Counted from the whole stretch's first letter, positions 25,685-38,194 are shown. The stretch: 60,418 bases of DNA, filler included, from Sluysia triapertura (GCA_046118255.1; 5 parts of 5 records of this genome joined end to end with filler, not necessarily neighbours in it); one strand, 5' to 3'. Made by a program: numbers and translations. Notes: a model not told the origin generated them from the sequence alone.

Positions 25685-25753
<69 letters not shown>

Positions 25754-26230
25754 TAAAATAAAAACAGAAAAATAATACTTTTATTAATGTTTTATATTTA
25801 ACATGATCTTTTCTTTTAATGTAATGAAATATTTTTACATAAAAATAAATGAATTTAAATAAAGTGAAATTTGTTGACTTAGAATGCAAAACCGATTAAA
25901 AGGTGTAAATTGTGATTCTAATGTTATGAGATAATGAATAAAAAATGTTTTAAATGAACTTTTAAATATACGTTGTTGGTTTTGAATGAAAGTAAAGTTT
26001 GGATGTTGAAAGATTGTAAATTTAAAATGTTTTGAAATATGTAAAATAGTTTTAATGGATCTAAAAAATAAAATATGAAAAAGGTTTTGATAATTTTTGA
26101 AAAGGTAACAAGTTAGTTAAGGTATTAAAAGAAATGAATGCAAGATGTATGTAAAAAGGCGTAATATGTAACTAAAGATACTAATAAAAAATTCCGTTTT
26201 AATTATAATGATGTTTGAAAGTCATTTTTG
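25685..26230 (-). repeat. Family D leader (AT-rich conserved block next to (ATA)n)
   Basis: ttgtgattctaatgttatgagataatgaataaa...ttttaatggatctaaaaaa block is shared with ~30360-30560 and ~37095-37280. Confidence 0.8.
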
Positions 26231-26599
26231 TTGGTGCGTTAAATATGATTTTATTTTTATGTTAAAATTAAATTTTTGAAGCAACAAAAAGATATACATT
26301 TTTGGCATTTATTTTTTAAATTAAAAATGAAAAGTGACAAATAACAATTACATAAAACTTTATTTATTATGTAGATAAAAGTTAAATATACTGTCCTGAA
26401 TGATGTGACACGAAAATTTCCTGTTCCGTTATCTGAAGAAAATATAAAAGTTATAATACTATTGTTAGCAGTGTACAATTTATCTACTTTAAGTTTATTG
26501 ATATTCGTCTCGTTAATGCTCGCGTTCAGGTTAGAAATTACAAGGGATCTTAATATATTCCCGATTCGATGAAGTAGATTGGTATCCTGTAAAGAATTA

Positions 26600-27339
26600 G
26601 TGAATGAATTCGTCAGTTCTTCTATAGCATGGGCATATATACAGTTGCTTCCTTATTTGACACAATTTCCGTGTTTGTCGGTGTTAGATAGGAACGTTGC
26701 TCTTTTGATGTCTTTACCAAGATCCATATTAGTCCAATGAGTTTGGCATAGATTGTACTGGAATGCATCACCTTTGTAATCTTTAAGTTTGTAAACATCA
26801 TCATTATATTTATCAAATTCATTATGATCATTTTTATAGTTTTTAGCTTTATAATCAAAAAGTTTATAATCGTTGATTTCGTAATCATTAATCTTATGAT
26901 TGTTAAGTTCGTAATAATTTATTTTATAAACATCAAATTCGTATTCAACATTTGTATAATCGTCAAATTGGTAATAAATACTCTTATTGTCATTAGGTTC
27001 ATAAACAACTTTTGTATAATCGTCAGATTCGCTATCAACATCTTTAATCACCTCATCAAGAGTAAATAATATAAAAAACTCATTCGTATTTTGAATACAT
27101 AATTTAAAACCTCTAACAGTAGAATTATCTTTAACATACAAGTCTATATTTGGTGGCGTATGTACTTTCAGAATAATACGCTTAATTTTTGTACAACAGT
27201 TCAATTTATTTAATGAATGAAGAGTACGATTAAATAAAAGCGTTATCGTTAACAATCTCAATTCCGGCATTGTATGAACTAAGCTATAATTACACTTGTA
27301 ACTAACAACACCATTCTGATCATTGATCTCAGATCGCAC
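26600..27339 (-). pseudogene. Intronless ORF: 'TPPN' segment, Asp/Tyr pentapeptide repeats and a degenerate C-terminal CCCH finger
   Basis: 228-codon ORF. Read through its stop it gives IKRATFLSNTDKHGNCVK*GSNCIYAHAIEEL, a Tis11-like finger with the first Cys lost. Confidence 0.65.
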
Positions 27340-27742
27340 CTTTTTCTGATTGTATCAGCCAATATATAACTAATTTCTCGAAAGTCATTTAAGCTTCTAA
27401 ATACATTATAAATAGGATTATTACGCAATAACCTTTTTAATTGTTGAAATTCGTCCATAATCTTCACGACATCCTGAGCATACAATTTAAATTTGGATTA
27501 GAAATCTCTGTTGGATTTATTTGTTCAATTGACATTGCCTTTCCAAAATAAGTTATGTTATTCAGGTAATTATTATTTATGAAAACATTAGCAAGTACCA
27601 AGTATCCGTGCATCAATATAGAAGAATATATATGATTAAGGCCACAAAATATTTGATATACAAAATAGCTAATTTGATCATACGAACATTCTTCTTTTGA
27701 TGATATTATACGATGTAATTCTGTTTTTACAAAGCTAAACAT
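27340..27742 (-). pseudogene. Intronless degenerate MAP kinase fragment (subdomains V-VII)
   Basis: FVKTELHRIISS...QISYFVYQIFCGLNHIYSSILMHGYLVLANVFIN..ITYFGKA matches MAPK METDLHxII..HIxYFLYQILRGLKYIHSAxVLHRDLKPxNxxIN..ICDFGLA. HRD and DFG are destroyed. Confidence 0.8.
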
Positions 27743-27744
27743 TA

Positions 27745-27950
27745 AAATGTAAAGAATTAAAATTGAATTTTGTTAATATTTCCTTATTTTTGCTAAAGAA
27801 TTAGAACTGTTGTTTTTATAATATTTAATTTATTTAATTTATGAGAAACAGAAAAATACACTTCTTTATTAAAAGGTGTGTAGTTTTTTTATGGGTTTTT
27901 ATTAAGTTGGGGCGCCAAAAATAAATATGTTGAAATGGGGTTGCAGCTTT
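27745..27950 (-). mobile_element. hAT-like MITE fragment, copy 2, abutting the 5' end of the MAPK fragment
   Basis: Reverse complement matches 25320-25560. Confidence 0.7.
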
Positions 27951-28049
27951 ATATAATGTTATAGTTGTGTCAAATTACTACTCATATAATTAGTAAATCA
28001 GTTGTAGTAGTAGTAGACACTAAAGTAAAGTTTGTGGCAGTAGTGGGAG

Positions 28050-28215
28050 CAGTCAGTTGAATCTGGTGGTTTCTCTTAGAGCGGGATTCGACCAACAATA
28101 ACCAAGTGTGTGGGGAATTGGTCTGGCCAAGGAAGAAAGGCATATCAAAAGATGGAGACTTCTGTTGTGCCTTGGGATCGAGTTGTGGGTCCGCCGGGAA
28201 ATTTGTGTGTAGTTG
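28050..28215 (-). mobile_element. Possible Ty3/gypsy Gag N-terminal remnant
   Basis: GC-rich island translating to PFFLGQTNSPHTWLLLVESR, similar to the Gag motif LPxFWxxxPxxWFxxVE. Confidence 0.3.
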
Positions 28216-28599
28216 CGATTACAGCTCCGTGGAAAAAAACTCTAATAGGCTATTTTGAGGTTTTAACATAGAGAACTGAACTTCATAAAAGTTGATTAAA
28301 AAAGGTATAAACATCAAATTGTATATAATTTTACTAAATCTAAAATTGATAATAAAGTTATAATTACTGGGCAGTCTGCATTTCGTATATGTCACTGTCT
28401 CTTTTTTAGGTTGTAGCATCCTAGAATAAAAAGGATCAAAATTAGTTAATACATAAGTATAAAAATCCATAATTACTTTAATATTTTATGGAATTGCATC
28501 ACATCTCCAAATTCATAGTACTTCTTCTTAGATATTGAACTGTTGGTTGCGTTGTCATAGAGTATGGTATGACATGATCATGGAATAGTATTATATTAG

Positions 28600-29387
28600 T
28601 GCCGTGATAACTTATTTGATCTACTGTATGATAGAATTCGCAAGTTGAACCAGATTTGATGCATTGTCATGTCTCACTGGATTGAAATGGGCATTGTAAA
28701 AATCTAATTGAATTCCGTTTTGCTTCAGTTGAAGTGAATTTGTTTCTCGACATAATTTTAAACAAATTTATTACTGATCATGTTACTGTTAGCTTCCTCA
28801 ATATGTCTAGGAATGATCATTGGGTAATAAATAATACTGATATTGATAAATTTATTCATAATTACATCATAAGAATGAGACGGTACTGCTTTCATATATA
28901 GTTTTATATTCGATATATTCCCAATTATTCTTGAATCGTTTGTCAATATAACTTTATTGTTGAATCTGCACACGCTCACTTGTGTCGTCATTAATAACTT
29001 TATCATTTTTCTTGTTAATCTTCTATTTACAATTAATATAGTCTTGTCTTGCTTATAAACTGAGAACATTGATCCATTATCTTCTTTCTCTGAGTGGTTG
29101 ACAGTTTGCGTTACTTCTACTTTACTTATAATTATCATATAATTATCATCGTAATTTTCCTCATCTAATAAAATGTCATCGATACTAATGATTCCTTTGT
29201 CTAATGCGGATTGATCAGAATCTTGTGTACGTACGTATTCAACTTTACTGTTAACATTGTTGCAAGTTTGTGAAATAAACTTTTGGGGGATCAAACTAAA
29301 CTCTTCACTTTTAGATACTAAAAATAATGTTATAGGATCACTGTAATTTAAGAAACACATTGTAGAGAATCTTTTAAAATACGTCAT
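28600..29387 (-). pseudogene. Intronless unknown ORF followed by a frameshifted CCCH finger
   Basis: 209-aa ORF (28758-29387), then CPFQSSET*QCIKSGSTCEFYHTVDQI at 28693-28615. Confidence 0.65.
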
Positions 29388-29739
29388 TGATGCTCATAAA
29401 ACTTGTTGTTGAACACTAAGTCGTTCACAAAATGTAAAAATATCATCAATCGTTGATATTCATTTGCATCACCTAATTCACCAATAATGCTTTGACGATT
29501 TTTTAACATATTTTGTTTATCGTCCATTTAGGAATATAAAAGCCAAAAGAAAATAAAATGAAGTTTACAATATAATTTTTATACGTTGAATTTTATTTTT
29601 GTTTACAGTTTATTATATTATGTTACGTATTGATAAAATTACGAAACTATTAATTTAAATAAAGTATGTATGTGATTTTTACAATAATTATTTCTCAATC
29701 TCTACACAGCCAGTGAAACAGCAACCGTGAATTAACAAC

Positions 29740-29973
29740 GATTGGGCATCCAATCAGGAGAACAAAAGTATTTAGCAAGACAGAAATGATTGGATGTTCA
29801 ATTAAACTGACAGTAAATACATATCAAACATCTGCGCACAGCAACAGCCACTAGTTGACTATCATAGTGATGAATTATTAGCTTTTTAATTTAAATCCGT
29901 CAACTAGTGGCAGATGCAATTGGGAATAGTGATTTTATGATAAAAATGGTTACATTAAATAATAATAATAATA

Positions 29974-30030
<57 letters not shown>

Positions 30031-30639
30031 GACGAAATTCAAATGCATAAACTATTTCGTTCTTTTAACATAATCTTTCTTTTATTTTAAAAAAATATAA
30101 ATATTTCTCGACATAAAAATAACTAAAATTATTTTCTTTCGAAATTAAATTTAAATTAAATTCTTTTGACCACAATGTTCAAACTAATTCTAAAATGTGA
30201 TTGTAGTGTTTTCGATGATATACAAGATTGCAAATTCAAAATGTTTTGGATTAATTTTAAAATATATGTTTGATAATTTAAGGTGTAATTTATGATTCGA
30301 ATATTGTAAATTTGTGAGTACAATGTTTTGAATAAATTTTAACGTTTTCAATGATAATTTAAGATATAATTGTGGTTCTGATGTTATGGGATAATGAATA
30401 AAATGATTTAAACGAATTTTTAAATGTACATTGATGGTTTTGAATGTAAGTATGATTTTGATGTTAAAATTGTGAATTTGAAGTGTTTTGAATGAAAACT
30501 TTTAATGGATCTAAAAAATGTAAAATATAGAAAAAAGTTTCGATACATTGTGAAAGGTAAAATGTACAATGTTAATGAATGTAATTATGCAATTGAAATG
30601 ATGATTTGAATTTTTAGCTAGAGTTTGACTACCACTACA
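29740..30639 (-). promoter_or_regulatory. Family D module: leader, (TAT)n, hairpin, paired CCAAT boxes
   Basis: Perfect 13-bp inverted repeat at 29847-29859 / 29899-29911. gattgggcatccaatc at 29740 and gattggatgttcaat at ~29788. Conserved leader 30030-30639. Confidence 0.65.
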
Positions 30640-31189
30640 TCAACAATCACTAATTCTTGTATTAACTTACAAAGTAGTTGCTGATACACAGTTGGCCAAT
30701 AAAAATTTTAGTACATATCAAAACAAAAGCAATCAGACACACTATTAATCACAATTCATAAATCTTAAAAGTTTTACCAATTTTAAAAATATGTTCAATC
30801 TGAAACTTTATGACGACAAGTCCTATCATATCCTTAAAGACTTTAAAATAAACTCAAATTTATCTATATACGTCTTACACAGTTGCCATCACTCTGACTA
30901 CCATGATGACACAAAACGATCGATTATGTCATAAATGTCATTATCTACAAATTTCAAGCAAGAATCAACGAACCTATAAAATAAGATCATTCACAATATG
31001 GTAAATATATCAAAATAGACCACAATAGCAATGAAAAATGTTTAATATTGTAATGATTCGTTTCAAGATTAGATACACTAAATTCTATAACTAATCATTT
31101 GTATTTTCAGGTGAATCTCAGTACCTCCTCGATATTTACAGAGAATCTGAATTTTATTTTATGAAAGTAAATGTGAATTTAAAAAATTA

Positions 31190-31474
31190 ATGTGTATGGA
31201 TCTGCAAGATTTCGAATTATTAAAGAAATGTTCAACTTCATTCACTAAAATTATGTGGCTAAAAACTCCACCTAATCTCGTTATAAAAATATTTGATATT
31301 GAAAAAGAAATAGAAATTAATAAGGGTTTTGATAAGAATATTATTGTTGTTAGTTTGTCGACAACCTTTAAATCACGATATTTATGTAATAATACATTTA
31401 TTAAAAAATATTTGTACACTATCAACTATATACAGACAATTTTTAACAGATGGACCCTGCAAACGTCAAGATGA
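31190..31474 (+). pseudogene. Short ORF homologous to the TPPN segment of the 26653-27339 ORF
   Basis: TKIMWLKTPPNLVIKIFD..KGF aligns with TKIKRIILKVHTPPNIDLYVKD..RGF. Confidence 0.4.
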
Positions 31475-31989
31475 AATGACTTACACAAGTGGCTGTTTAA
31501 TCACTATCGTGGCAAAATAAAATACATCAACTACCGCAACAGTTAGAAAATACGGGCTTAATTCCGTTAACGGAAAATCATGTGATTTATCTCAAGTACG
31601 GTATTTTAGTTTTTATTCTGATTTTGCTTTAGTTGATTTTTATTCTTATATAAAGTTATTTAAAGTTATGACTTCAATATGTTCGGGACTGTTTCAATAT
31701 TTAACGTTTAACAAGCCAATATCATTTAAATGTTTTGCGTATGATTTGAATAAACGCATTTTATGTTATATTTACTAAATTTTTAATAAATTTAATTTAA
31801 ATTAAAAAATTTATAAAGGAGAATTTTACAGATCCAATGTAGCAATTAATATTAATGGTTTTTATTTCAATAATTCTTATATAAATAAAACTATAGAAAT
31901 GTATTTAAAATTCATAAAACCAAATAAATACTATTCAAATAATTTAACACGAAATCTACATCCATTTCGAAACTTTAATCCACCGACAA

Positions 31990-32457
31990 AATTCGACAAC
32001 GGTCACAGCGGTCAGACCGAAACAACTGGCGGCGGTGTTCTTCTCTATGGGTAGCACCTCTTCAAATCGTCAAAAAGAAAGATGTGTAACTATAGAATGC
32101 TGAACAAAGTCATAGTGCCAGACACATATCCTGTGTCACTCATAACAGATATTCTACACAGATTTTCTGGTTGTAAAATTTTCTCTTCAATAGAGCTCGC
32201 AAATGCATACCACTAAATTCCAGTACATACTGAAGATAGCCGTTACCACTCCTTTCGGTTCGTTCGAATTTACAATGATGTCTTTCGGTCTAAGAAATGC
32301 ATCACAAACCTTCCAGCAACACACGAACGAATTTCTTCAAGGTTTAACTTTCGCCACAGCTTATATCGATGGCATGATAATTGCTTACAGAGATTTTAAA
32401 CAACATCAAACATATCTGGAACAAGTATTCCAAAGACTATCCGATAATAACAATTAG
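31990..32457 (+). mobile_element. Ty3/gypsy reverse transcriptase remnant (frameshifted)
   Basis: CNYRMLNKVIVPDTYPV..FSGCKIFSSIELANAYH and TTPFGSFEFTMMSFGLRNASQTFQ..AYIDG (YxDD decayed). Confidence 0.92.
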
Positions 32458-32629
32458 GCAGCACTAGACTACGAACAATTTCATATCACCCACAATCCAA
32501 ATGTATGAGAGAGAGATTCCGAAGAAACATTACCAAGTTTTACATCGGTATTTTTTCTAAACAAGCTACATTAAACGTAAGTGCGTTAACAAGAAACTTA
32601 TAAAATATATAAACCTTTTTGTGATTGTA

Positions 32630-33330
32630 TATTTACTTCTGGTTATGGTGAGTTCTGTCAAGATGAATAATCTTCTGTAAATGGTCGTGTGAAGTTTTCT
32701 TTAATCAGATATTGTCAAAGTAACTTGGAAATCTTAAGAGAAACATTTATTAAGTTAACGTCAGAATATCAGAATTATTCTCTTTTTATTGAAAATGGAA
32801 ATTTATCTGTAGAACTCCGTCGTAAAGATTTCTACAATACCATGAAAGTAATAAGCACGTAAGATTGAATTGTTTGACGGTTTTCTTACATGAAAATTCA
32901 TCCATTTTTCAGATAAACAATGGAACTAAACATATTATAAGGAACAGTAACGAATATGTTGCATGAAAATATGTTGCACAGTGGGAAAGGTGAAATAAAC
33001 TTTGTGTATCAGTATGTCTACTACAGACGACAACGATGGAACCATTTCGATATTACGAATTAGTGAGACTGAAATCGGAGTTATAGCTAGCTATTGCTAC
33101 TGCTTACAACTACTACTACTGAATTTAGTGGCAGCAGTAATGCTAATTTAGAAGAAGTGTTCGTGAAAAATGCTCAAGGGACAGTTAAGTCTGCTAGTGT
33201 TTTTAGTATCCCAGTATCGTTCGCAGTCGCTCTTTTTATTGCTATTATTTTCATTATAGTATCATTCTTTAAATTCTCGCATCTCCAAGAAATTACGCCA
33301 CATGAAGAAGACATATATCGTATGTGGTAA
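32630..33330 (+). pseudogene. Possible degenerate neurexin/LamG-type single-pass membrane protein fragment
   Basis: GYGEFCQDE (EGF-end-like), LFIENGNLSV and INNGTKHIIR (LamG-like), a Thr-rich stalk, then a TM segment VALFIAIIFIIVSFFKF. Many stops, no introns. Weak similarity. Confidence 0.3.
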
Positions 33331-33679
33331 TGGTAGGTTGCTGAGTCTAATGTTATTTATTACTATTATGAGATTAGGGTTATTTATTAGATAAATTGAT
33401 TTAATTTTATTAAAAGCCGTCGCTAATAATCAAATTTGATTATTAATATTACATTTTAATAAGATTTTTATTATAAAACTAGATGTGAACTTCTTTAAAC
33501 ATAAGAACACATAAGAAAACGAATCTATCTATTTTTATAATATTGAAACTAAAATTAAAAACATTTTTTATTTGTCTAAAATTTTCCTGAAAATGCCACC
33601 TGTAGTCTTCATATACTTCGCTAAATAAAGACGAACATAAAAATAGAAATAAATCAAAATAAATGGAATCATATTTAAG

Positions 33680-34360
33680 AATTATTTATGTCTTCTTGGG
33701 TCATATGGTCCCGTCGGGAAGCAGCAAGATTGACATTGAGAATATTCACCCCATTGACAGAAAAGATTTGCATACGAGAATAACTTGCTAAAATAGAAAA
33801 AAAGGTTCTTTATTCGCTCATAATGTTCACTGGGATTTGCTTGATGAACGACAAAATTTTTAAATTCATTGGCTCTGTGACAATAGGACATCTTCTAGCA
33901 TATTTAGCACATTCACCGGTTTGTGTCGTTTCATATGGACAGATAGCGATCTTATAATTCTTGAAGCCATTACCATAAATTGATGGATTTGTATATAAAA
34001 GTTTGTTATTATTATCAAAAGGCTTTAAGTGGCTAAACTTTGATTCCGTAGTGATAATGATCTCTATGTTATAATAATTGAATCAATGTCTATTAATCTA
34101 AGGGCATTGTAAATATTCTTGTTAGTCTAATATAGACTTCATTAATTTCATTATTACAAAGGTTAATAAGATTCAATAATAACATGCATATTTCATAAGA
34201 CATATCGGAGTTGTTAGATATACATACTGAATGATTATTTTTTCATTTAAAATACTTAAATACATTGCATGTGTCTTTGATTAGACTGTCTTTTATTTGA
34301 CTATCATTGCGTTGATTTAAGGTTGTTAATATAATTACATTTCGATAAAATTATTAGATC
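33680..34360 (-). pseudogene. Degenerate unknown ORF plus frameshifted CCCH finger
   Basis: KNYKIAICPYETTQTGECAKYARRC[1-nt loss]YCHRANEF at 33956-33865. Confidence 0.65.
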
Positions 34361-34812
34361 AAGATTATTTATTAGTAAATTTATATTTATTTTATTAGGA
34401 GATATTATTAAGGCTTTATTGCAGTAAAAAATTTGTATTTCATTTTTACGTTATTTAAGAGAATTAATCTAAAATCTATTAAATTAAATAAAAACACGTA
34501 TAACAATCTAATTTTTTTCATATTAATAAAACTAAAATTATTAATGTTTATTAATTTTCGAATATGTTTTCTTCTCGACCATAATCCAACAACTAAATGA
34601 AAAGATATAATTAAATTATCATCATCATAATTATATCTATTATTTACTTTAATTTCATCAGGTATAGATTCATGCATTTGTATTTTTGTGAAATTGTTGG
34701 CTCGTACTTTGAAATCTTTTACGGATGAATACTGTATTGGAGCAGAAATGTCTATAGATCCCAATAGGCCTTTCATTCTGTCAAGATGCATGCCGGTAAC
34801 TGTTGAGTTAAT

Positions 34813-35007
34813 TTATAGCTCTTCAAGCTCGCTGAGTGAGTGAAAGTACTTACATTTCGTACCATATCTCATGCATTTTCCGTTCTGCATTGTCATAAAC
34901 AGACATAGAGCTGTTTTGTAGTGTTTATTAAAATTTGTTGAACTATAAATCTTTATACGTATGGGTTTGTTGTCCACACGCGATGACTTAAAATCACTAT
35001 ACTTCAC
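34813..35007 (-). pseudogene. CCCH zinc finger (Tis11-like lead-in) directly downstream of the helicase remnant
   Basis: HYKTALCLFMTMQNGKCMRYGTKCKYFHSLSEL. Confidence 0.8.
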
Positions 35008-35084
35008 GTTATCTTATGAATCTTTGATCATGAAGCGTTGAAATTATTGTTAATGATTAGTGAACAAATATTTTGCATAGTAAG

Positions 35085-36180
35085 TCACAATTTCTTTACC
35101 ATCTCAACAAAAGACTTTTCGATTTCAGGAAATATGAAAGTAGTAGCATAATCTGTTTTAACAGTTCGTACAGTTCGACTATTTCTGTAAGGATAAGCAA
35201 CAACATTTTCTGGAACATTGAGATTGAAAACTATAACAATGTCTTCGAAATCTAATACTGTACTGACAAACGGATGAGCAAACATATCACATGCATTACA
35301 TGATTTGGAAAGATTCACGTTTTGTTTCTTGCGAAACATTCGTGGCTTCGAGCATACTGAAAAAATGTCTTTAATATTCATTTTATTTATAATGGATTCA
35401 TAATACCACGTAATAGGATAAACTTTAACAAAGACTAAAACTTTAGATAGGTATGATTTATTATTATAGTGCGTTAATGTTTCACATATTAATCCAACAT
35501 CATTAATCATAGCCCAAATACATTGTTTCAACTGTGTTGGAAAATTACTTTCTAATGTGGCATCAACAAATTGTAGATCATGTAACAAAGATCAGTACTT
35601 CTATTCAACTTCATCATAACATGTCACGGAATAAATTTCTGTTTGTCTAAAAATCTTTATATTATTCTTCTTATCTTTCTTGCTTGATTTTGGTGATATA
35701 ATTCGTAAAACTTTATCAATTTCTTGACCTAATTGATAACTCATCATTATATCTTCCTCGTAAATTGCCAAATGTTGAATAGAATAAAAAATTTCTTTAA
35801 TTTGGCTAGTGTAATGAAGCATCATTAAATTCGACCAGGAGTCAACATCAGGAATACTACGTTCAGTTAATTGATCATTCATATCTCTAGTTAAGCCCAT
35901 TATTTTCAGATTTAATCCTTCACTCATCTTCATTAGTTCACCATACTCTTGTATTACTAATTTTTATAAACATTAATGGTCGATCGATATCTAAACATTG
36001 TTGAATAACTGGAATACAGTAAGAACCAGTTTTTACAATGCCGGTTCCAGATAAACCAGTAACATTTTTATGTTTCAGTAATAATGGTATAGCATGTTGT
36101 TCAATTTGAGACAACTTTAACCATTTTAATTTAGAAATATTGTCTAAAATCTCTGATATTTTAGTTGTGGCTGTTATCAT
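35085..36180 (-). pseudogene. Intronless, disrupted DEAD-box helicase, most similar to DDX56/Dbp9
   Basis: Q motif/motif I (WLKLSQIEQHAIPLLL..GTGIVKTGSYCIPVIQ), decayed DEAD (LAIYEEDIM), motif III (YSVT), and motifs V-VI (LDFEDIVIVFNLNVP..AYPYRNSRTVR..TFIFP), split across three ORFs. Confidence 0.85.
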
Positions 36181-36269
36181 TGTTTAACCAAATAATATTA
36201 TTAAAGTGTTGTTTTTCGTATCCTAGAGGCGCATACAAATACATAAAAATATAAAAGGACCATTTTACA

Positions 36270-37510
36270 AGTGATTGGATGAGAAGCAATATGAAAATAG
36301 CATTGCTTAACTTTCATTAGTTTTTTGTTCAGAACAAGTGATAACGCTGAACATAGTAATTTTCATTGGATAACCAATGACAGTATAGAAACAGTAGTAA
36401 CAAAGTATTGATACACAATTAATGATAATAGCAAGTGAGATAAACTGAATGGTGTGTCTGTATCTATAACTGTCAGCAATTGACAGTAAATTGGATAGAT
36501 AGTATTAAGTTTAATTTAAAACTGTCAATTGCTAGCAGTTACAAAATAAAGTACATAAAATTAAAAATGACTGTGATAATGAAATGATAATAATATTAAT
36601 ATAAAATTGAAGACAAATCATTTTTATTTACTCTTTACATGAGCTTTCTATTAATGTATTAAAATATTTCTTAACATAAAATTAACTAAATAATTAATTT
36701 TTAAAAAAAGATTAAAAATAAAATTCTTTAGAATCATCATGATATTCTTTTGTCTTTGTTATATTATAAATTTATTGATGAAATTACAGATTTCTTTTAA
36801 ATTTAGAGTAAGGTAGCGGTTGGTCTATTTTTTAGCTAAACTTTGCGATACAAGTTTTAGTTCTTATTTTATTTGGAAAAGAGTTTATTGAGTAATAACA
36901 AAGATGTAAATTATAAAAAGACTGGTAAGAAGTGATTGATTCTGAAGTGTTTAGAGAATGTTATTTTGATTACAATATCTAAAATGATTTCAAAGTGTTG
37001 GTTTTATGTTTTCAGTGCTGTTTGATATTGAATGTTGAGGGTTGTAAACTTAAAATATCTTGGATTGAATTTAAGACGGAAAATTGATAGTTTGAGATGT
37101 AATTGTGATTCAAATGTTATGAGATCATGAATAAATGGTTTTAAAGAGTTTTTAGATAAGGATGACAATTTTGAATGTCATTAAGATTTGGATGTTGACA
37201 TATTATTAATTTAAACGTTTTGAGGTATGGAAAATGGTTTTAGTTGATCTGAAGAAATAAAATATAAAAAAAGGTTTTAATGAAAATAGCTAGAATGATA
37301 AAGAATATGATTTTGTGTGAAGTATATTGGATTAAGTTTGCAATGTTTTGAATTAATTTTTAAAGTAAATCTTTGATGATTTTTGGTATTAAATGTGAAT
37401 TTGATGTTATGTAATTTTATTTTTCGAATGTTTGGAAGTATTATGAATTATGAAATGTTGTGAAAGGTCTTTTTAGAATAAGACTCTATGATATTGTGTT
37501 AGTCACCACA
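36270..37510 (-). promoter_or_regulatory. Family D module upstream of the helicase remnant
   Basis: Inverted repeat at 36467-36487 / 36521-36541 (19/21 match), gattgg boxes at ~36273 and ~36365, and a conserved leader starting TGTGGTGACTAAC at 37510. Confidence 0.65.
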
Positions 37511-37797
37511 ATCATTACCAGAATAAACCATAGGCCTAAATTTTAAATTATCTTTTTAAAAGGGAAGAGTTCTGTATTTCTATCAACATATTTGAATGGA
37601 TAATTGAATGTTTTAATTATGTCTAATTTGAATAGATCACAATAATATTGTAGGTTGCTGGATTCGTTAGAAATTATAATAAAATAATTAGACATTGTAA
37701 ATTGAATAATAATAATATTGTTTGATATATTTTTAATTGAATAAATTTTGAAAATTTTTTTATTAACTCTTTCTTTTCTTTTTTTGTTGTTAATGAT

Positions 37798-38123
37798 GAT
37801 TGGACTTCCAATTAGAACAAGCAAAATCACAGTACAGAGGTAACATTGATTGGATGTCCAATCAATTGCTATATTTAACAAGACACAGCTACCAGTATGC
37901 ATGTATGCCGACTGAGATATAGTATTAATTACACTGACATGTAATTAACTGTCATCAGTCTACAGCTCATAAGGTATGTTAAAATGTTTTAAATTAAACT
38001 GTCGACTGGCAACAGGGTGTAATTAAAAAGACACTTATATAATGGTAATAAAAATGAGAATATAATTAATTTTGGTAATGCATTAAAATAATGATAATAC
38101 AAATGGTTATCATTATTGAATAA

Positions 38124-38194
<71 letters not shown>
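37798..38194 (-). promoter_or_regulatory. Family D module cut by the contig end
   Basis: gattggacttccaat (37798), gattggatgtccaatc (37848), inverted repeat at 37949-37965 / 37999-38015, then (ATA)n. Confidence 0.6.

What the first reader, a model, noticed from the sequence alone, without database searches (positions are those of the whole stretch)
26600..35007. Four CCCH fingers with non-canonical C-x9-C-x6-C-x3-H spacing attached behind different upstream sequences
Seen in sequence: fingers at ~26615-26712, 28628-28693, 33877-33956 and 34830-34925, all on the minus strand. All keep x9/x6/x3 spacing, and most keep a Tis11-like YKTxLC lead-in or an H-x3-EL tail. Established: Tis11/TTP fingers are C-x8-C-x5-C-x3-H and usually occur in tandem pairs. 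Here single fingers follow a MAPK remnant plus TPPN ORF, two unknown ORFs and a DEAD-box remnant. Three are disabled (stop, frameshift or Cys loss), and the ORF track hides them. Inference: a lineage-specific RNA-binding module that is repeatedly shuffled and turns over quickly.
Basis: partly seen in the sequence, partly recalled or inferred. Interest (0 to 1): 0.75.

Follow-up and report, generated by a model that had tools for sequence, protein, structure and literature searches.

The report
Four Unkempt-spaced CCCH finger copies, mostly dead
An AT-rich eukaryotic segment carries four diverged copies of one small RNA-binding zinc-finger module, three of them broken, each lying behind a different decayed gene copy; the "odd" cysteine spacing is already known from the third finger of the animal protein Unkempt.

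Summary
Four minus-strand CCCH fingers align without gaps in C-x9-C-x6-C-x3-H register. Only F4 (34840-34905) is intact. F2 has a TGA in loop 1. F1 has its first Cys changed to Phe and a TAA in loop 2. F3 lacks one base between the third Cys and the His. About 0.02 exact pattern matches are expected per piece by chance, and two are seen.

The spacing is not new. Unkempt finger 3 (PDB 5elh) has exactly this spacing, and F4 passes Pfam PF25427 (zf-CCCH_UNK) without gaps. By residues F4 is closest to TTP/TIS11. None of the 79 best hits among 1.84 billion representative proteins has x9/x6 spacing.

The upstream sequences are an ERK-type MAPK-like copy and a DDX47-like DEAD-box copy. Both are collinear with their families, lack catalytic motifs and carry a few stops and frameshifts. 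The other two upstream ORFs are orphans.

Only the roughly 60-codon finger module is shared between the four units. Physical fusion is well supported only for F1, which sits in a 233-codon open frame. F4 has no ATG and is cut off from the helicase copy by stops in every frame.

My reading is a small local family of a known finger type, now mostly pseudogenes. Interest is modest. The organism and any transcripts remain unknown.

The parts
34816..35013 (-). F4 module. A stop-free run of 66 codons that holds the only intact finger (core 34840-34905, C-x9-C-x6-C-x3-H). There is no ATG before the finger, and a TAA stop follows at 34813-34815.
   Evidence: Pfam zf-CCCH_UNK 34.2 bits, above the 31.1 threshold. 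TTP 1m9o E 1.3e-7. AF2 pLDDT about 81-83 over the finger. Best folds are TIS11d and Unkempt ZnF1-3, the latter at rmsd 1.9 A.
33813..34082 (-). F3 module. A 90-codon run with lead-in YKIAIC and Cys1-3 at x9/x6 spacing. One base is missing between Cys3 (33888-33890) and the His codon (33877-33879), and the shifted frame stays open to 33685.
   Evidence: Pfam zf-CCCH_UNK E 2.2e-4. Gapless match to Unkempt ZnF3 in 5elh. tblastx against the F4 module, 51 aa, E 6.9e-6.
28502..28777 (-). F2 module. Core 28628-28693 has exact spacing, with a TGA stop at 28667-28669 in loop 1.
26599..26772 (-). F1 module. Phe replaces Cys1 at 26692-26694 and a TAA stop sits at 26653-26655 in loop 2. Cys2, Cys3, His and the H-x3-EL tail are kept.
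   Evidence: tblastx against the F4 module, E 1.6e-4.
26656..27354 (-). A 233-codon stop-free run ('TPPN ORF') with a D/Y/N/K-rich 30-aa tandem duplication. It runs directly into F1.
   Evidence: No family or PDB match.
27467..27772 (-). ERK-type MAPK-like remnant covering kinase subdomains V-VII. HRDLKPSN reads HGYLVLAN and DFG reads YFG. Its frame overlaps the next open runs (27282-27497, then 26656-27354).
   Evidence: Pfam Pkinase 1.2e-6. PDB MPK6/ERK5/ERK1/Fus3, E about 1e-7. Frames.
28761..29393 (-). Orphan 211-codon open run upstream of F2. Its end overlaps the F2 frame by 17 nt in another frame.
   Evidence: No Pfam, PDB, word-index, metagenome or viral match.
35088..36183 (-). DEAD-box helicase-like copy, collinear over about 365 codons without introns. 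It has one frameshift (about 35941-35963) and two stops (35592-35603). Motifs I, II, III and VI are all altered.
   Evidence: Pfam DEAD 4.5e-4. PDB DDX47 2.6e-7 for the N-terminal part and DDX53/Spb4 5e-4 for the C-terminal part..
34411..34812 (-). A 134-codon run in the F4 frame, directly after the F4 stop and upstream of F3. Orphan.
   Evidence: No significant similarity to the sequences downstream of the other fingers.
31899..32457 (+). Degenerate Ty3/gypsy-type reverse transcriptase fragment lying between the two finger pairs.
   Evidence: Pfam RVT_1 7e-8. Frames.

Best explanation
The piece holds a small local family of four diverged copies of one module of about 60 codons. Each copy has a short lead-in followed by a single CCCH zinc finger. 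In residues the finger is TTP/TIS11-like (YKTxLC lead-in, Gly before Cys2, aromatic residues after Cys2 and Cys3, H-x3-EL tail). In loop lengths it matches Unkempt finger 3 (x9/x6/x3).

If expressed, such a finger would hold one zinc ion and bind a few bases of single-stranded, probably U/A-rich, RNA. That function is inferred from family knowledge and was not tested.

Each copy lies 3' of a different coding sequence on the same strand: an ERK-like pseudokinase copy, a DDX47-like pseudo-helicase copy and two orphan ORFs. These neighbours kept long open frames while losing catalytic motifs, so they evolved under some constraint for a long time. They now carry a few stops and frameshifts.

Three fingers are broken by one or two AT-biased lesions each (GGA to TGA, TGT to TTT, a Tyr codon to TAA, one missing base). 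The fourth is intact but has no start codon of its own. The cluster is therefore best read as a lineage-restricted, mostly pseudogenised gene family. At least one member (unit 1) had the finger fused in frame behind other protein sequence.
For: - Register and lesions.
- Not chance: (0.02 expected, 2 exact seen).
- Finger type: Pfam PF25427 above threshold and gapless; gapless match to Unkempt ZnF3; TTP E 1.3e-7 with a one-residue gap in each loop; alignment A1 shows the extra residue in both loops against 28 closest hits; the model folds, with TIS11d and Unkempt as nearest structures.
- Only the module is shared between units. No more copies in the piece.
- Minus-strand coding now or recently: 11 stop-free runs of at least 100 codons against 0.63 expected, 9 of them on the minus strand.
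- Neighbours identified.
- F1 lies in a 233-codon open frame, and successive open runs overlap back to the MAPK remnant.
Against: - No transcript, read or same-genome data were available, so neither expression nor the family's true size is known.
- F4 is highly consensus-like (about 60% identical to the TTP finger), which suggests it may still be a working exon rather than dead.
- F4 cannot be joined in frame to the helicase copy by any simple GT-AG intron that keeps the region it shares with F3.
- The fusion argument rests mainly on unit 1.
- The organism is unidentified.
Confidence: 0.55

Rival explanations
1. F4 is the last or an internal exon of a live gene, and possibly other fingers were until recently. 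The family consists of real chimeric proteins in which dead-enzyme scaffolds (pseudokinase, pseudo-helicase) carry one C-terminal Unkempt-spaced CCCH finger as an RNA-targeting tag.
For: - F4 keeps every ligand and nearly all TTP consensus residues.
- The neighbours kept long open frames despite extreme divergence and loss of catalytic motifs.
- F1 is in frame with 233 upstream codons.
Against: - Every unit has at least one stop or frameshift.
- The stops inside the helicase copy lie in positions that align with helicase sequence, so they are not in introns.
- The F4 frame has no ATG, and 75 nt with stops in all frames separate it from the helicase copy.
- No homologous intact protein was found.
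Confidence: 0.2
2. The units are chimeric retrocopies. A reverse transcriptase started on an RNA whose 3' part encodes the finger and switched template to cellular mRNAs (MAPK, DEAD-box). That would give intronless host-gene copies joined 5' to a common 3' module.
For: - The MAPK-like and DEAD-box-like copies are collinear with their families and show no introns.
- All units share one orientation.
- A retroelement RT fragment and dispersed repeats lie in the cluster.
Against: - No poly(A) remnant or target-site duplication after the modules.
- The copies are far too diverged from each other (about 33% amino-acid identity, near-random DNA identity) yet retain long open frames. Neutral retrocopies would not do that.
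- The intron habit of the host is unknown.
Confidence: 0.1
3. The four fingers are independent small genes or relics of a tandemly duplicated mini-gene. Their position behind other decayed genes is coincidence in a pseudogene-rich, repeat-rich region.
For: - Homology between units is limited to the module.
- In U4 the shared region begins exactly at the start of the open run.
- F3 and F4 are neighbours about 950 nt apart and are the most similar pair.
Against: - No copy has an ATG-initiated ORF covering the finger.
- F1's frame is open for 233 codons upstream.
Confidence: 0.12
4. The matches arise by chance in AT-rich sequence.
For: None beyond the low complexity of the region.
Against: - 0.02 matches expected against 2 exact plus 2 near matches.
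- Pfam score above threshold.
- PDB E 1.3e-7.
- Mutual tblastx E down to 7e-6.
Confidence: 0.01

Closest known systems
Unkempt zinc finger 3 (mouse Unkempt ZnF1-3, PDB 5elh; Pfam PF25427 zf-CCCH_UNK)
   Same: It has an identical C-x9-C-x6-C-x3-H spacing, a YKTxxC lead-in and an H-x3-[DE]L tail. F3 and F4 align to it without gaps. F4 passes the Pfam gathering score. It gives the lowest rmsd to the F4 model, 1.9 A.
   Different: Unkempt has six fingers in two packed clusters plus a C-terminal RING domain. Here there are single fingers with no other CCCH type nearby. Residue identity to Unkempt is only about 30%.
TTP/TIS11 (ZFP36) tandem zinc-finger family (PDB 1m9o, 1rgo)
   Same: This is the best sequence match (E 1.3e-7). 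It shares the (R/K)YKTxLC lead-in, Gly before Cys2, YG after Cys2, an aromatic residue after Cys3 and the H-x3-EL tail. 1rgo is the top Foldseek row.
   Different: TTP fingers are C-x8-C-x5-C-x3-H and occur as a pair 18 residues apart. Here each loop has one extra residue and the finger is single. F4 does not score on PF00642, whereas canonical hits do.
Nematode and protist multi-CCCH proteins with variable first loops (for example MEX-5, PDB 6pmg; hits P0001-P0079)
   Same: TTP-like residues. Some have an x9 or x10 first loop.
   Different: All keep x5 (rarely x4 or x6 with x7) in the second loop. None of the 79 has x9/x6.
Plant CCCH survey classes (Wang et al. 2008, PMC2267713)
   Same: The finger falls within the general definition C-X4-15-C-X4-6-C-X3-H.
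   Different: The C-X9-C-X6 class is not among the classes tabulated for Arabidopsis and rice. Second loops of x6 are rare there.

Membership tests
Pfam PF25427 zf-CCCH_UNK (UNK-like CCCH finger) | Score at or above the curated gathering threshold (31.1 bits) | tested here: met
   F4 scores 34.2 bits, residues 28-60 on profile positions 3-35, gapless. F3 scores 21.5 bits (E 2.2e-4) and the F2 fragment 12.6 bits, both below threshold because they are broken.
Pfam PF25427 zf-CCCH_UNK (UNK-like CCCH finger) | C-x9-C-x6-C-x3-H ligand spacing, as in Unkempt ZnF3 | tested here: met
   The 5elh chain aligned shows x9/x6/x3. F4 and F2 match it exactly. F1 and F3 are in register.
Unkempt/Unkempt-like orthologues | Six CCCH fingers in two clusters of three, plus a C-terminal RING | tested here: not met
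   There are only four isolated fingers of one type across 8.4 kb, separated by unrelated ORFs. No other CCCH pattern occurs in six frames and no RING hit was found.
TTP/TIS11 (ZFP36) family | C-x8-C-x5-C-x3-H spacing | tested here: not met
   There is one extra residue in each loop relative to TTP and to 28 closest hits. No PF00642 hit at E<=0.1.
TTP/TIS11 (ZFP36) family | Two fingers in tandem with an 18-residue linker | tested here: not met
   There is a single finger per unit. The profile scan finds no second copy nearby.
TTP/TIS11 (ZFP36) family | (R/K)YKTELC lead-in | tested here: met
   F4 reads HYKTALC and F3 reads NYKIAIC. The lead-in is degenerate in F1 (IKRATF) and F2 (IRFLQC).
MAP kinases (upstream of F1) | Catalytic loop HRDLKPxN and DFG | tested here: not met
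   HGYLVLAN and YFG stand at the aligned positions. It is a MAPK-derived sequence, not an active kinase.
DEAD-box helicases (upstream of F4) | Motifs I (AxTGSGKT), II (DEAD), III (SAT) and VI (HRxGRxGR) | tested here: not met
   The aligned positions read SGTGIVKT, YEED, RQT and YRNSRTVRT, and there are two stops and a frameshift.
RNA-binding function of the finger | Zinc binding and binding of single-stranded RNA | not testable with these tools
   This is inferred only from sequence and fold similarity.

The most novel reading that the evidence does not exclude
An unidentified AT-rich eukaryote has, or recently had, a birth-and-death family of chimeric proteins. In these, catalytically dead copies of housekeeping enzymes (an ERK-type kinase, a DDX47-type helicase) and orphan domains are each tagged with one TTP-like, Unkempt-spaced CCCH finger. 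The result would be a modular way to bring varied scaffolds to RNA. F4 would be a still-functional exon.
Probability: 0.15. Interest if true: 0.55.

Novelty: new member of a known kind. Interest (0 to 1): 0.3.

Why it matters
If the fusions are real and expressed, single CCCH fingers attached to pseudo-enzymes would be an unusual example of domain shuffling that creates RNA-targeted scaffolds. They would also be a convenient natural series for asking what one TTP-like finger with Unkempt-type loops recognises. As it stands, the spacing has a known precedent and a Pfam model, and most copies are broken. The finding is therefore mainly a well-documented small pseudogene family, plus a caution that 'non-canonical' spacing should be checked against Unkempt-type fingers.

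Tried and rejected
- **Ciliate code.** I tested whether TAA/TAG as Gln would rescue the frames. F2's stop is TGA, and TGA-free runs occur in all frames on both strands. Long standard-code ORFs exist, so the standard code holds.
- **DNA-level repeats.** No significant DNA similarity links the four finger regions. Only protein-level similarity is seen.
- **Conserved region after the finger.** By eye there seemed to be an 'H..RIKNLF' motif. Shuffling does not support it (z <= 1).
- **Paired segmental duplication.** I considered that the two repeat-bounded blocks might be duplicates. No pairing of units supports this.
- **'TPPN ORF' as the MAPK C-lobe.** No PDB or Pfam match was found.
- **An intron joining the helicase ORF to F4.** A GTAAAG donor exists at about 35097. 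In-frame acceptors either hit stops or would delete the part shared with F3.
- **Relatives and organism.** All of the following gave nothing:
  - word-index searches with F4, the 209-aa ORF and the RT ORF;
  - exact look-up of ten ORFs;
  - metagenome scans;
  - a viral scan;
  - Rfam and tRNA scans.
  The cluster look-up of top hits carried no organism names.
Full report
**Scope.** Only 25685-38194 was analysed. The piece is 27% G+C, has no N, and looks like nuclear DNA of an AT-rich eukaryote. The organism could not be identified with the tools at hand. No reads or transcript tool was available.

**Observation.**
- A six-frame pattern search finds two exact C-x9-C-x6-C-x3-H matches, both on the minus strand. 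F4 is at 34840-34905. F2 is at 28628-28693 and has a TGA inside loop 1.
- Reading the other two sites frame by frame shows the same register.
- F1 has Phe (TTT, 26692-26694) in place of Cys1 and a TAA (26653-26655) in loop 2, at the position where the other copies have Tyr.
- F3 keeps Cys1-3 at x9/x6, but only 8 nt lie between Cys3 (33888-33890) and the CAC His codon (33877-33879). The DNA alignment with F4 puts a single-base gap there.
- With X at the breaks, the four modules align without gaps through the finger.
- Dinucleotide-preserving simulations give 0.02 exact matches per piece.
- A profile built from the four copies finds no fifth copy.
F4's open run (34816-35013) has no ATG before the finger, so it cannot be a stand-alone gene.

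**What kind of finger it is.**
- F4 matches Pfam PF25427 (zf-CCCH_UNK) at 34.2 bits, above the gathering score of 31.1. Residues 28-60 align to profile positions 3-35 without gaps. It gives no hit to the canonical C-x8-C-x5 model PF00642.
- Canonical hits behave the other way round. They score best on PF00642 and need gaps on the UNK model.
- In the PDB search with F3, the only finger hit is mouse Unkempt ZnF1-3 (5elh). The aligned stretch shows Unkempt finger 3 with exactly nine, six and three residues between ligands, a YKTxxC lead-in and an H-x3-DL tail.
- By residues, however, F4 is nearest to TTP (1m9o, E 1.3e-7) and TIS11d, with a one-residue gap in each loop.
- An alignment with 28 of the closest database fingers shows the extra residue in both loops of F4 and F3 and in none of the others.
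- An AlphaFold2 model built on that alignment has pLDDT about 81-83 over the finger. Its nearest solved folds are TIS11d and Unkempt ZnF1-3 (rmsd 1.9 A over 33 columns). The Foldseek E-values are not significant, as expected for 35 residues.
- The spacing is thus non-canonical for TTP but has a solved precedent and a curated family model.
- In the Arabidopsis/rice survey the x9/x6 class is not tabulated, although it falls within the general C-X4-15-C-X4-6-C-X3-H definition (PMC2267713).

**Relatives.**
- An exhaustive phmmer search of 1.84 billion representative proteins with the F4 ORF gave 79 hits at E<=1e-3. Nearly all were multi-finger proteins.
- None contains an x9/x6 finger. Among their fingers, 228 are x8/x5 and 55 are x7/x5.
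- This fits a lineage-restricted variant. It does not prove absence, because a single finger at 35-40% identity (the level seen among the four copies here) would score below the cut-off.
- Word-index, exact-look-up, metagenome and viral searches with F4 and with neighbouring ORFs found nothing.

**Surroundings.**
- The minus strand is, or recently was, coding. There are 11 stop-free runs of at least 100 codons against 0.63 expected, and 9 of them are on the minus strand.
- Upstream of F4 lies a DEAD-box helicase-like copy (36183 to 35088). It is collinear over about 365 codons with no intron. Its N-terminal part is closest to DDX47 (E 2.6e-7) and its C-terminal part to DDX53/Spb4 (E 5e-4).
- Motifs I, II, III and VI of this copy are all altered. 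There is one frameshift and two stops, and these lie inside aligned helicase sequence.
- Upstream of F1 lies an ERK-type MAPK-like remnant (27772-27467, E 1e-7 to MPK6/ERK5/ERK1/Fus3). HRDLKPSN reads HGYLVLAN and DFG reads YFG.
- The ORFs upstream of F2 (211 codons) and of F3 (134 codons) have no detectable relatives.
- Such deep divergence with so few stops, in a genome where a random frame hits a stop about every 12 codons, means these copies were kept open by selection for most of their history and decayed only recently. This is an inference.

**Are the fingers attached?** Between the four units, tblastx finds only the finger module: F3-F4 51 aa at E 6.9e-6, F1-F4 48 aa at E 1.6e-4, and F1-F2 and F2-F3 weaker.
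- F1: the attachment is physical. The finger lies in a 233-codon open run (27354-26656). That run overlaps the preceding open runs (27497-27282 and 27772-27467) in the manner of frameshifts in a once-continuous ORF reaching back to the MAPK remnant.
- F2: its frame overlaps the end of the 211-codon ORF by 17 nt in another frame. One frameshift would join them, which is weak evidence.
- F4: 75 nt with stops in all frames separate it from the helicase ORF. I found no GT-AG intron that joins them in frame while keeping the part shared with F3.
- 'Shuffled behind different sequences' is therefore shown for position, well supported as a fusion for one unit, and untested at the transcript level.

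**Decay.** Each broken finger carries only one or two lesions, and all are in the AT-increasing direction: the Gly-position codon to TGA, TGT to TTT, a Tyr-position codon to TAA, and one missing base. The copies are only about 33% identical to each other yet keep ligands and register. This points to long constraint followed by recent, independent loss, rather than to old junk. F4 is about 60% identical to the TTP finger over the core. It may still be functional as an exon.

**Verdict.** This is a real, non-random, small local family of a known finger type: TTP-like residues with Unkempt-ZnF3 loop lengths, Pfam PF25427. It is mostly pseudogenised and sits behind decayed pseudo-enzyme copies.
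- The modular-shuffling idea remains possible but unproven.
- Rivals are a live chimeric family, template-switch retrocopies, independent mini-genes and chance. They are weighed in their own sections, and chance is excluded.

Noticed in passing
window 25687-26120, 29889-30589, 36462-37315 (to about 37481): A dispersed repeat of about 0.6-0.8 kb with a 200-nt core 78-81% identical and internal sub-repeats of about 80 nt. Each copy lies near a (TAA)n run. The three copies bracket the two pairs of finger units. It may be a MITE/SINE-like element or a shared upstream region.
   Followed up: partly
window 27985-28241: A G+C-rich island (44-47% against 27% background, with strong G-over-C skew on the + strand) between units U2 and U1. 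It has no Rfam or tRNA match and its origin is unknown.
   Followed up: partly
window 31899-32457 (+): A degenerate Ty3/gypsy-type reverse transcriptase fragment (Pfam RVT_1 7e-8) with a stop and a frameshift. It lies on the opposite strand to the finger units.
   Followed up: partly
window 26773-27041 (-): A 90-nt (30-aa) tandem duplication, 66% identical, that encodes the D/Y/N/K-rich spacer between the 'TPPN' region and F1.
   Followed up: no
window 36467-36541: An imperfect 21-nt-arm hairpin (90% complementary) inside the third repeat copy. Its only Rfam row is a far sub-threshold miRNA-like match (24 bits against a gathering score of 89).
   Followed up: no
window 25686-25760, 29970-30030, 38125-38190: Long (TAA)n microsatellites at both ends and in the middle of the piece.
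   Followed up: no
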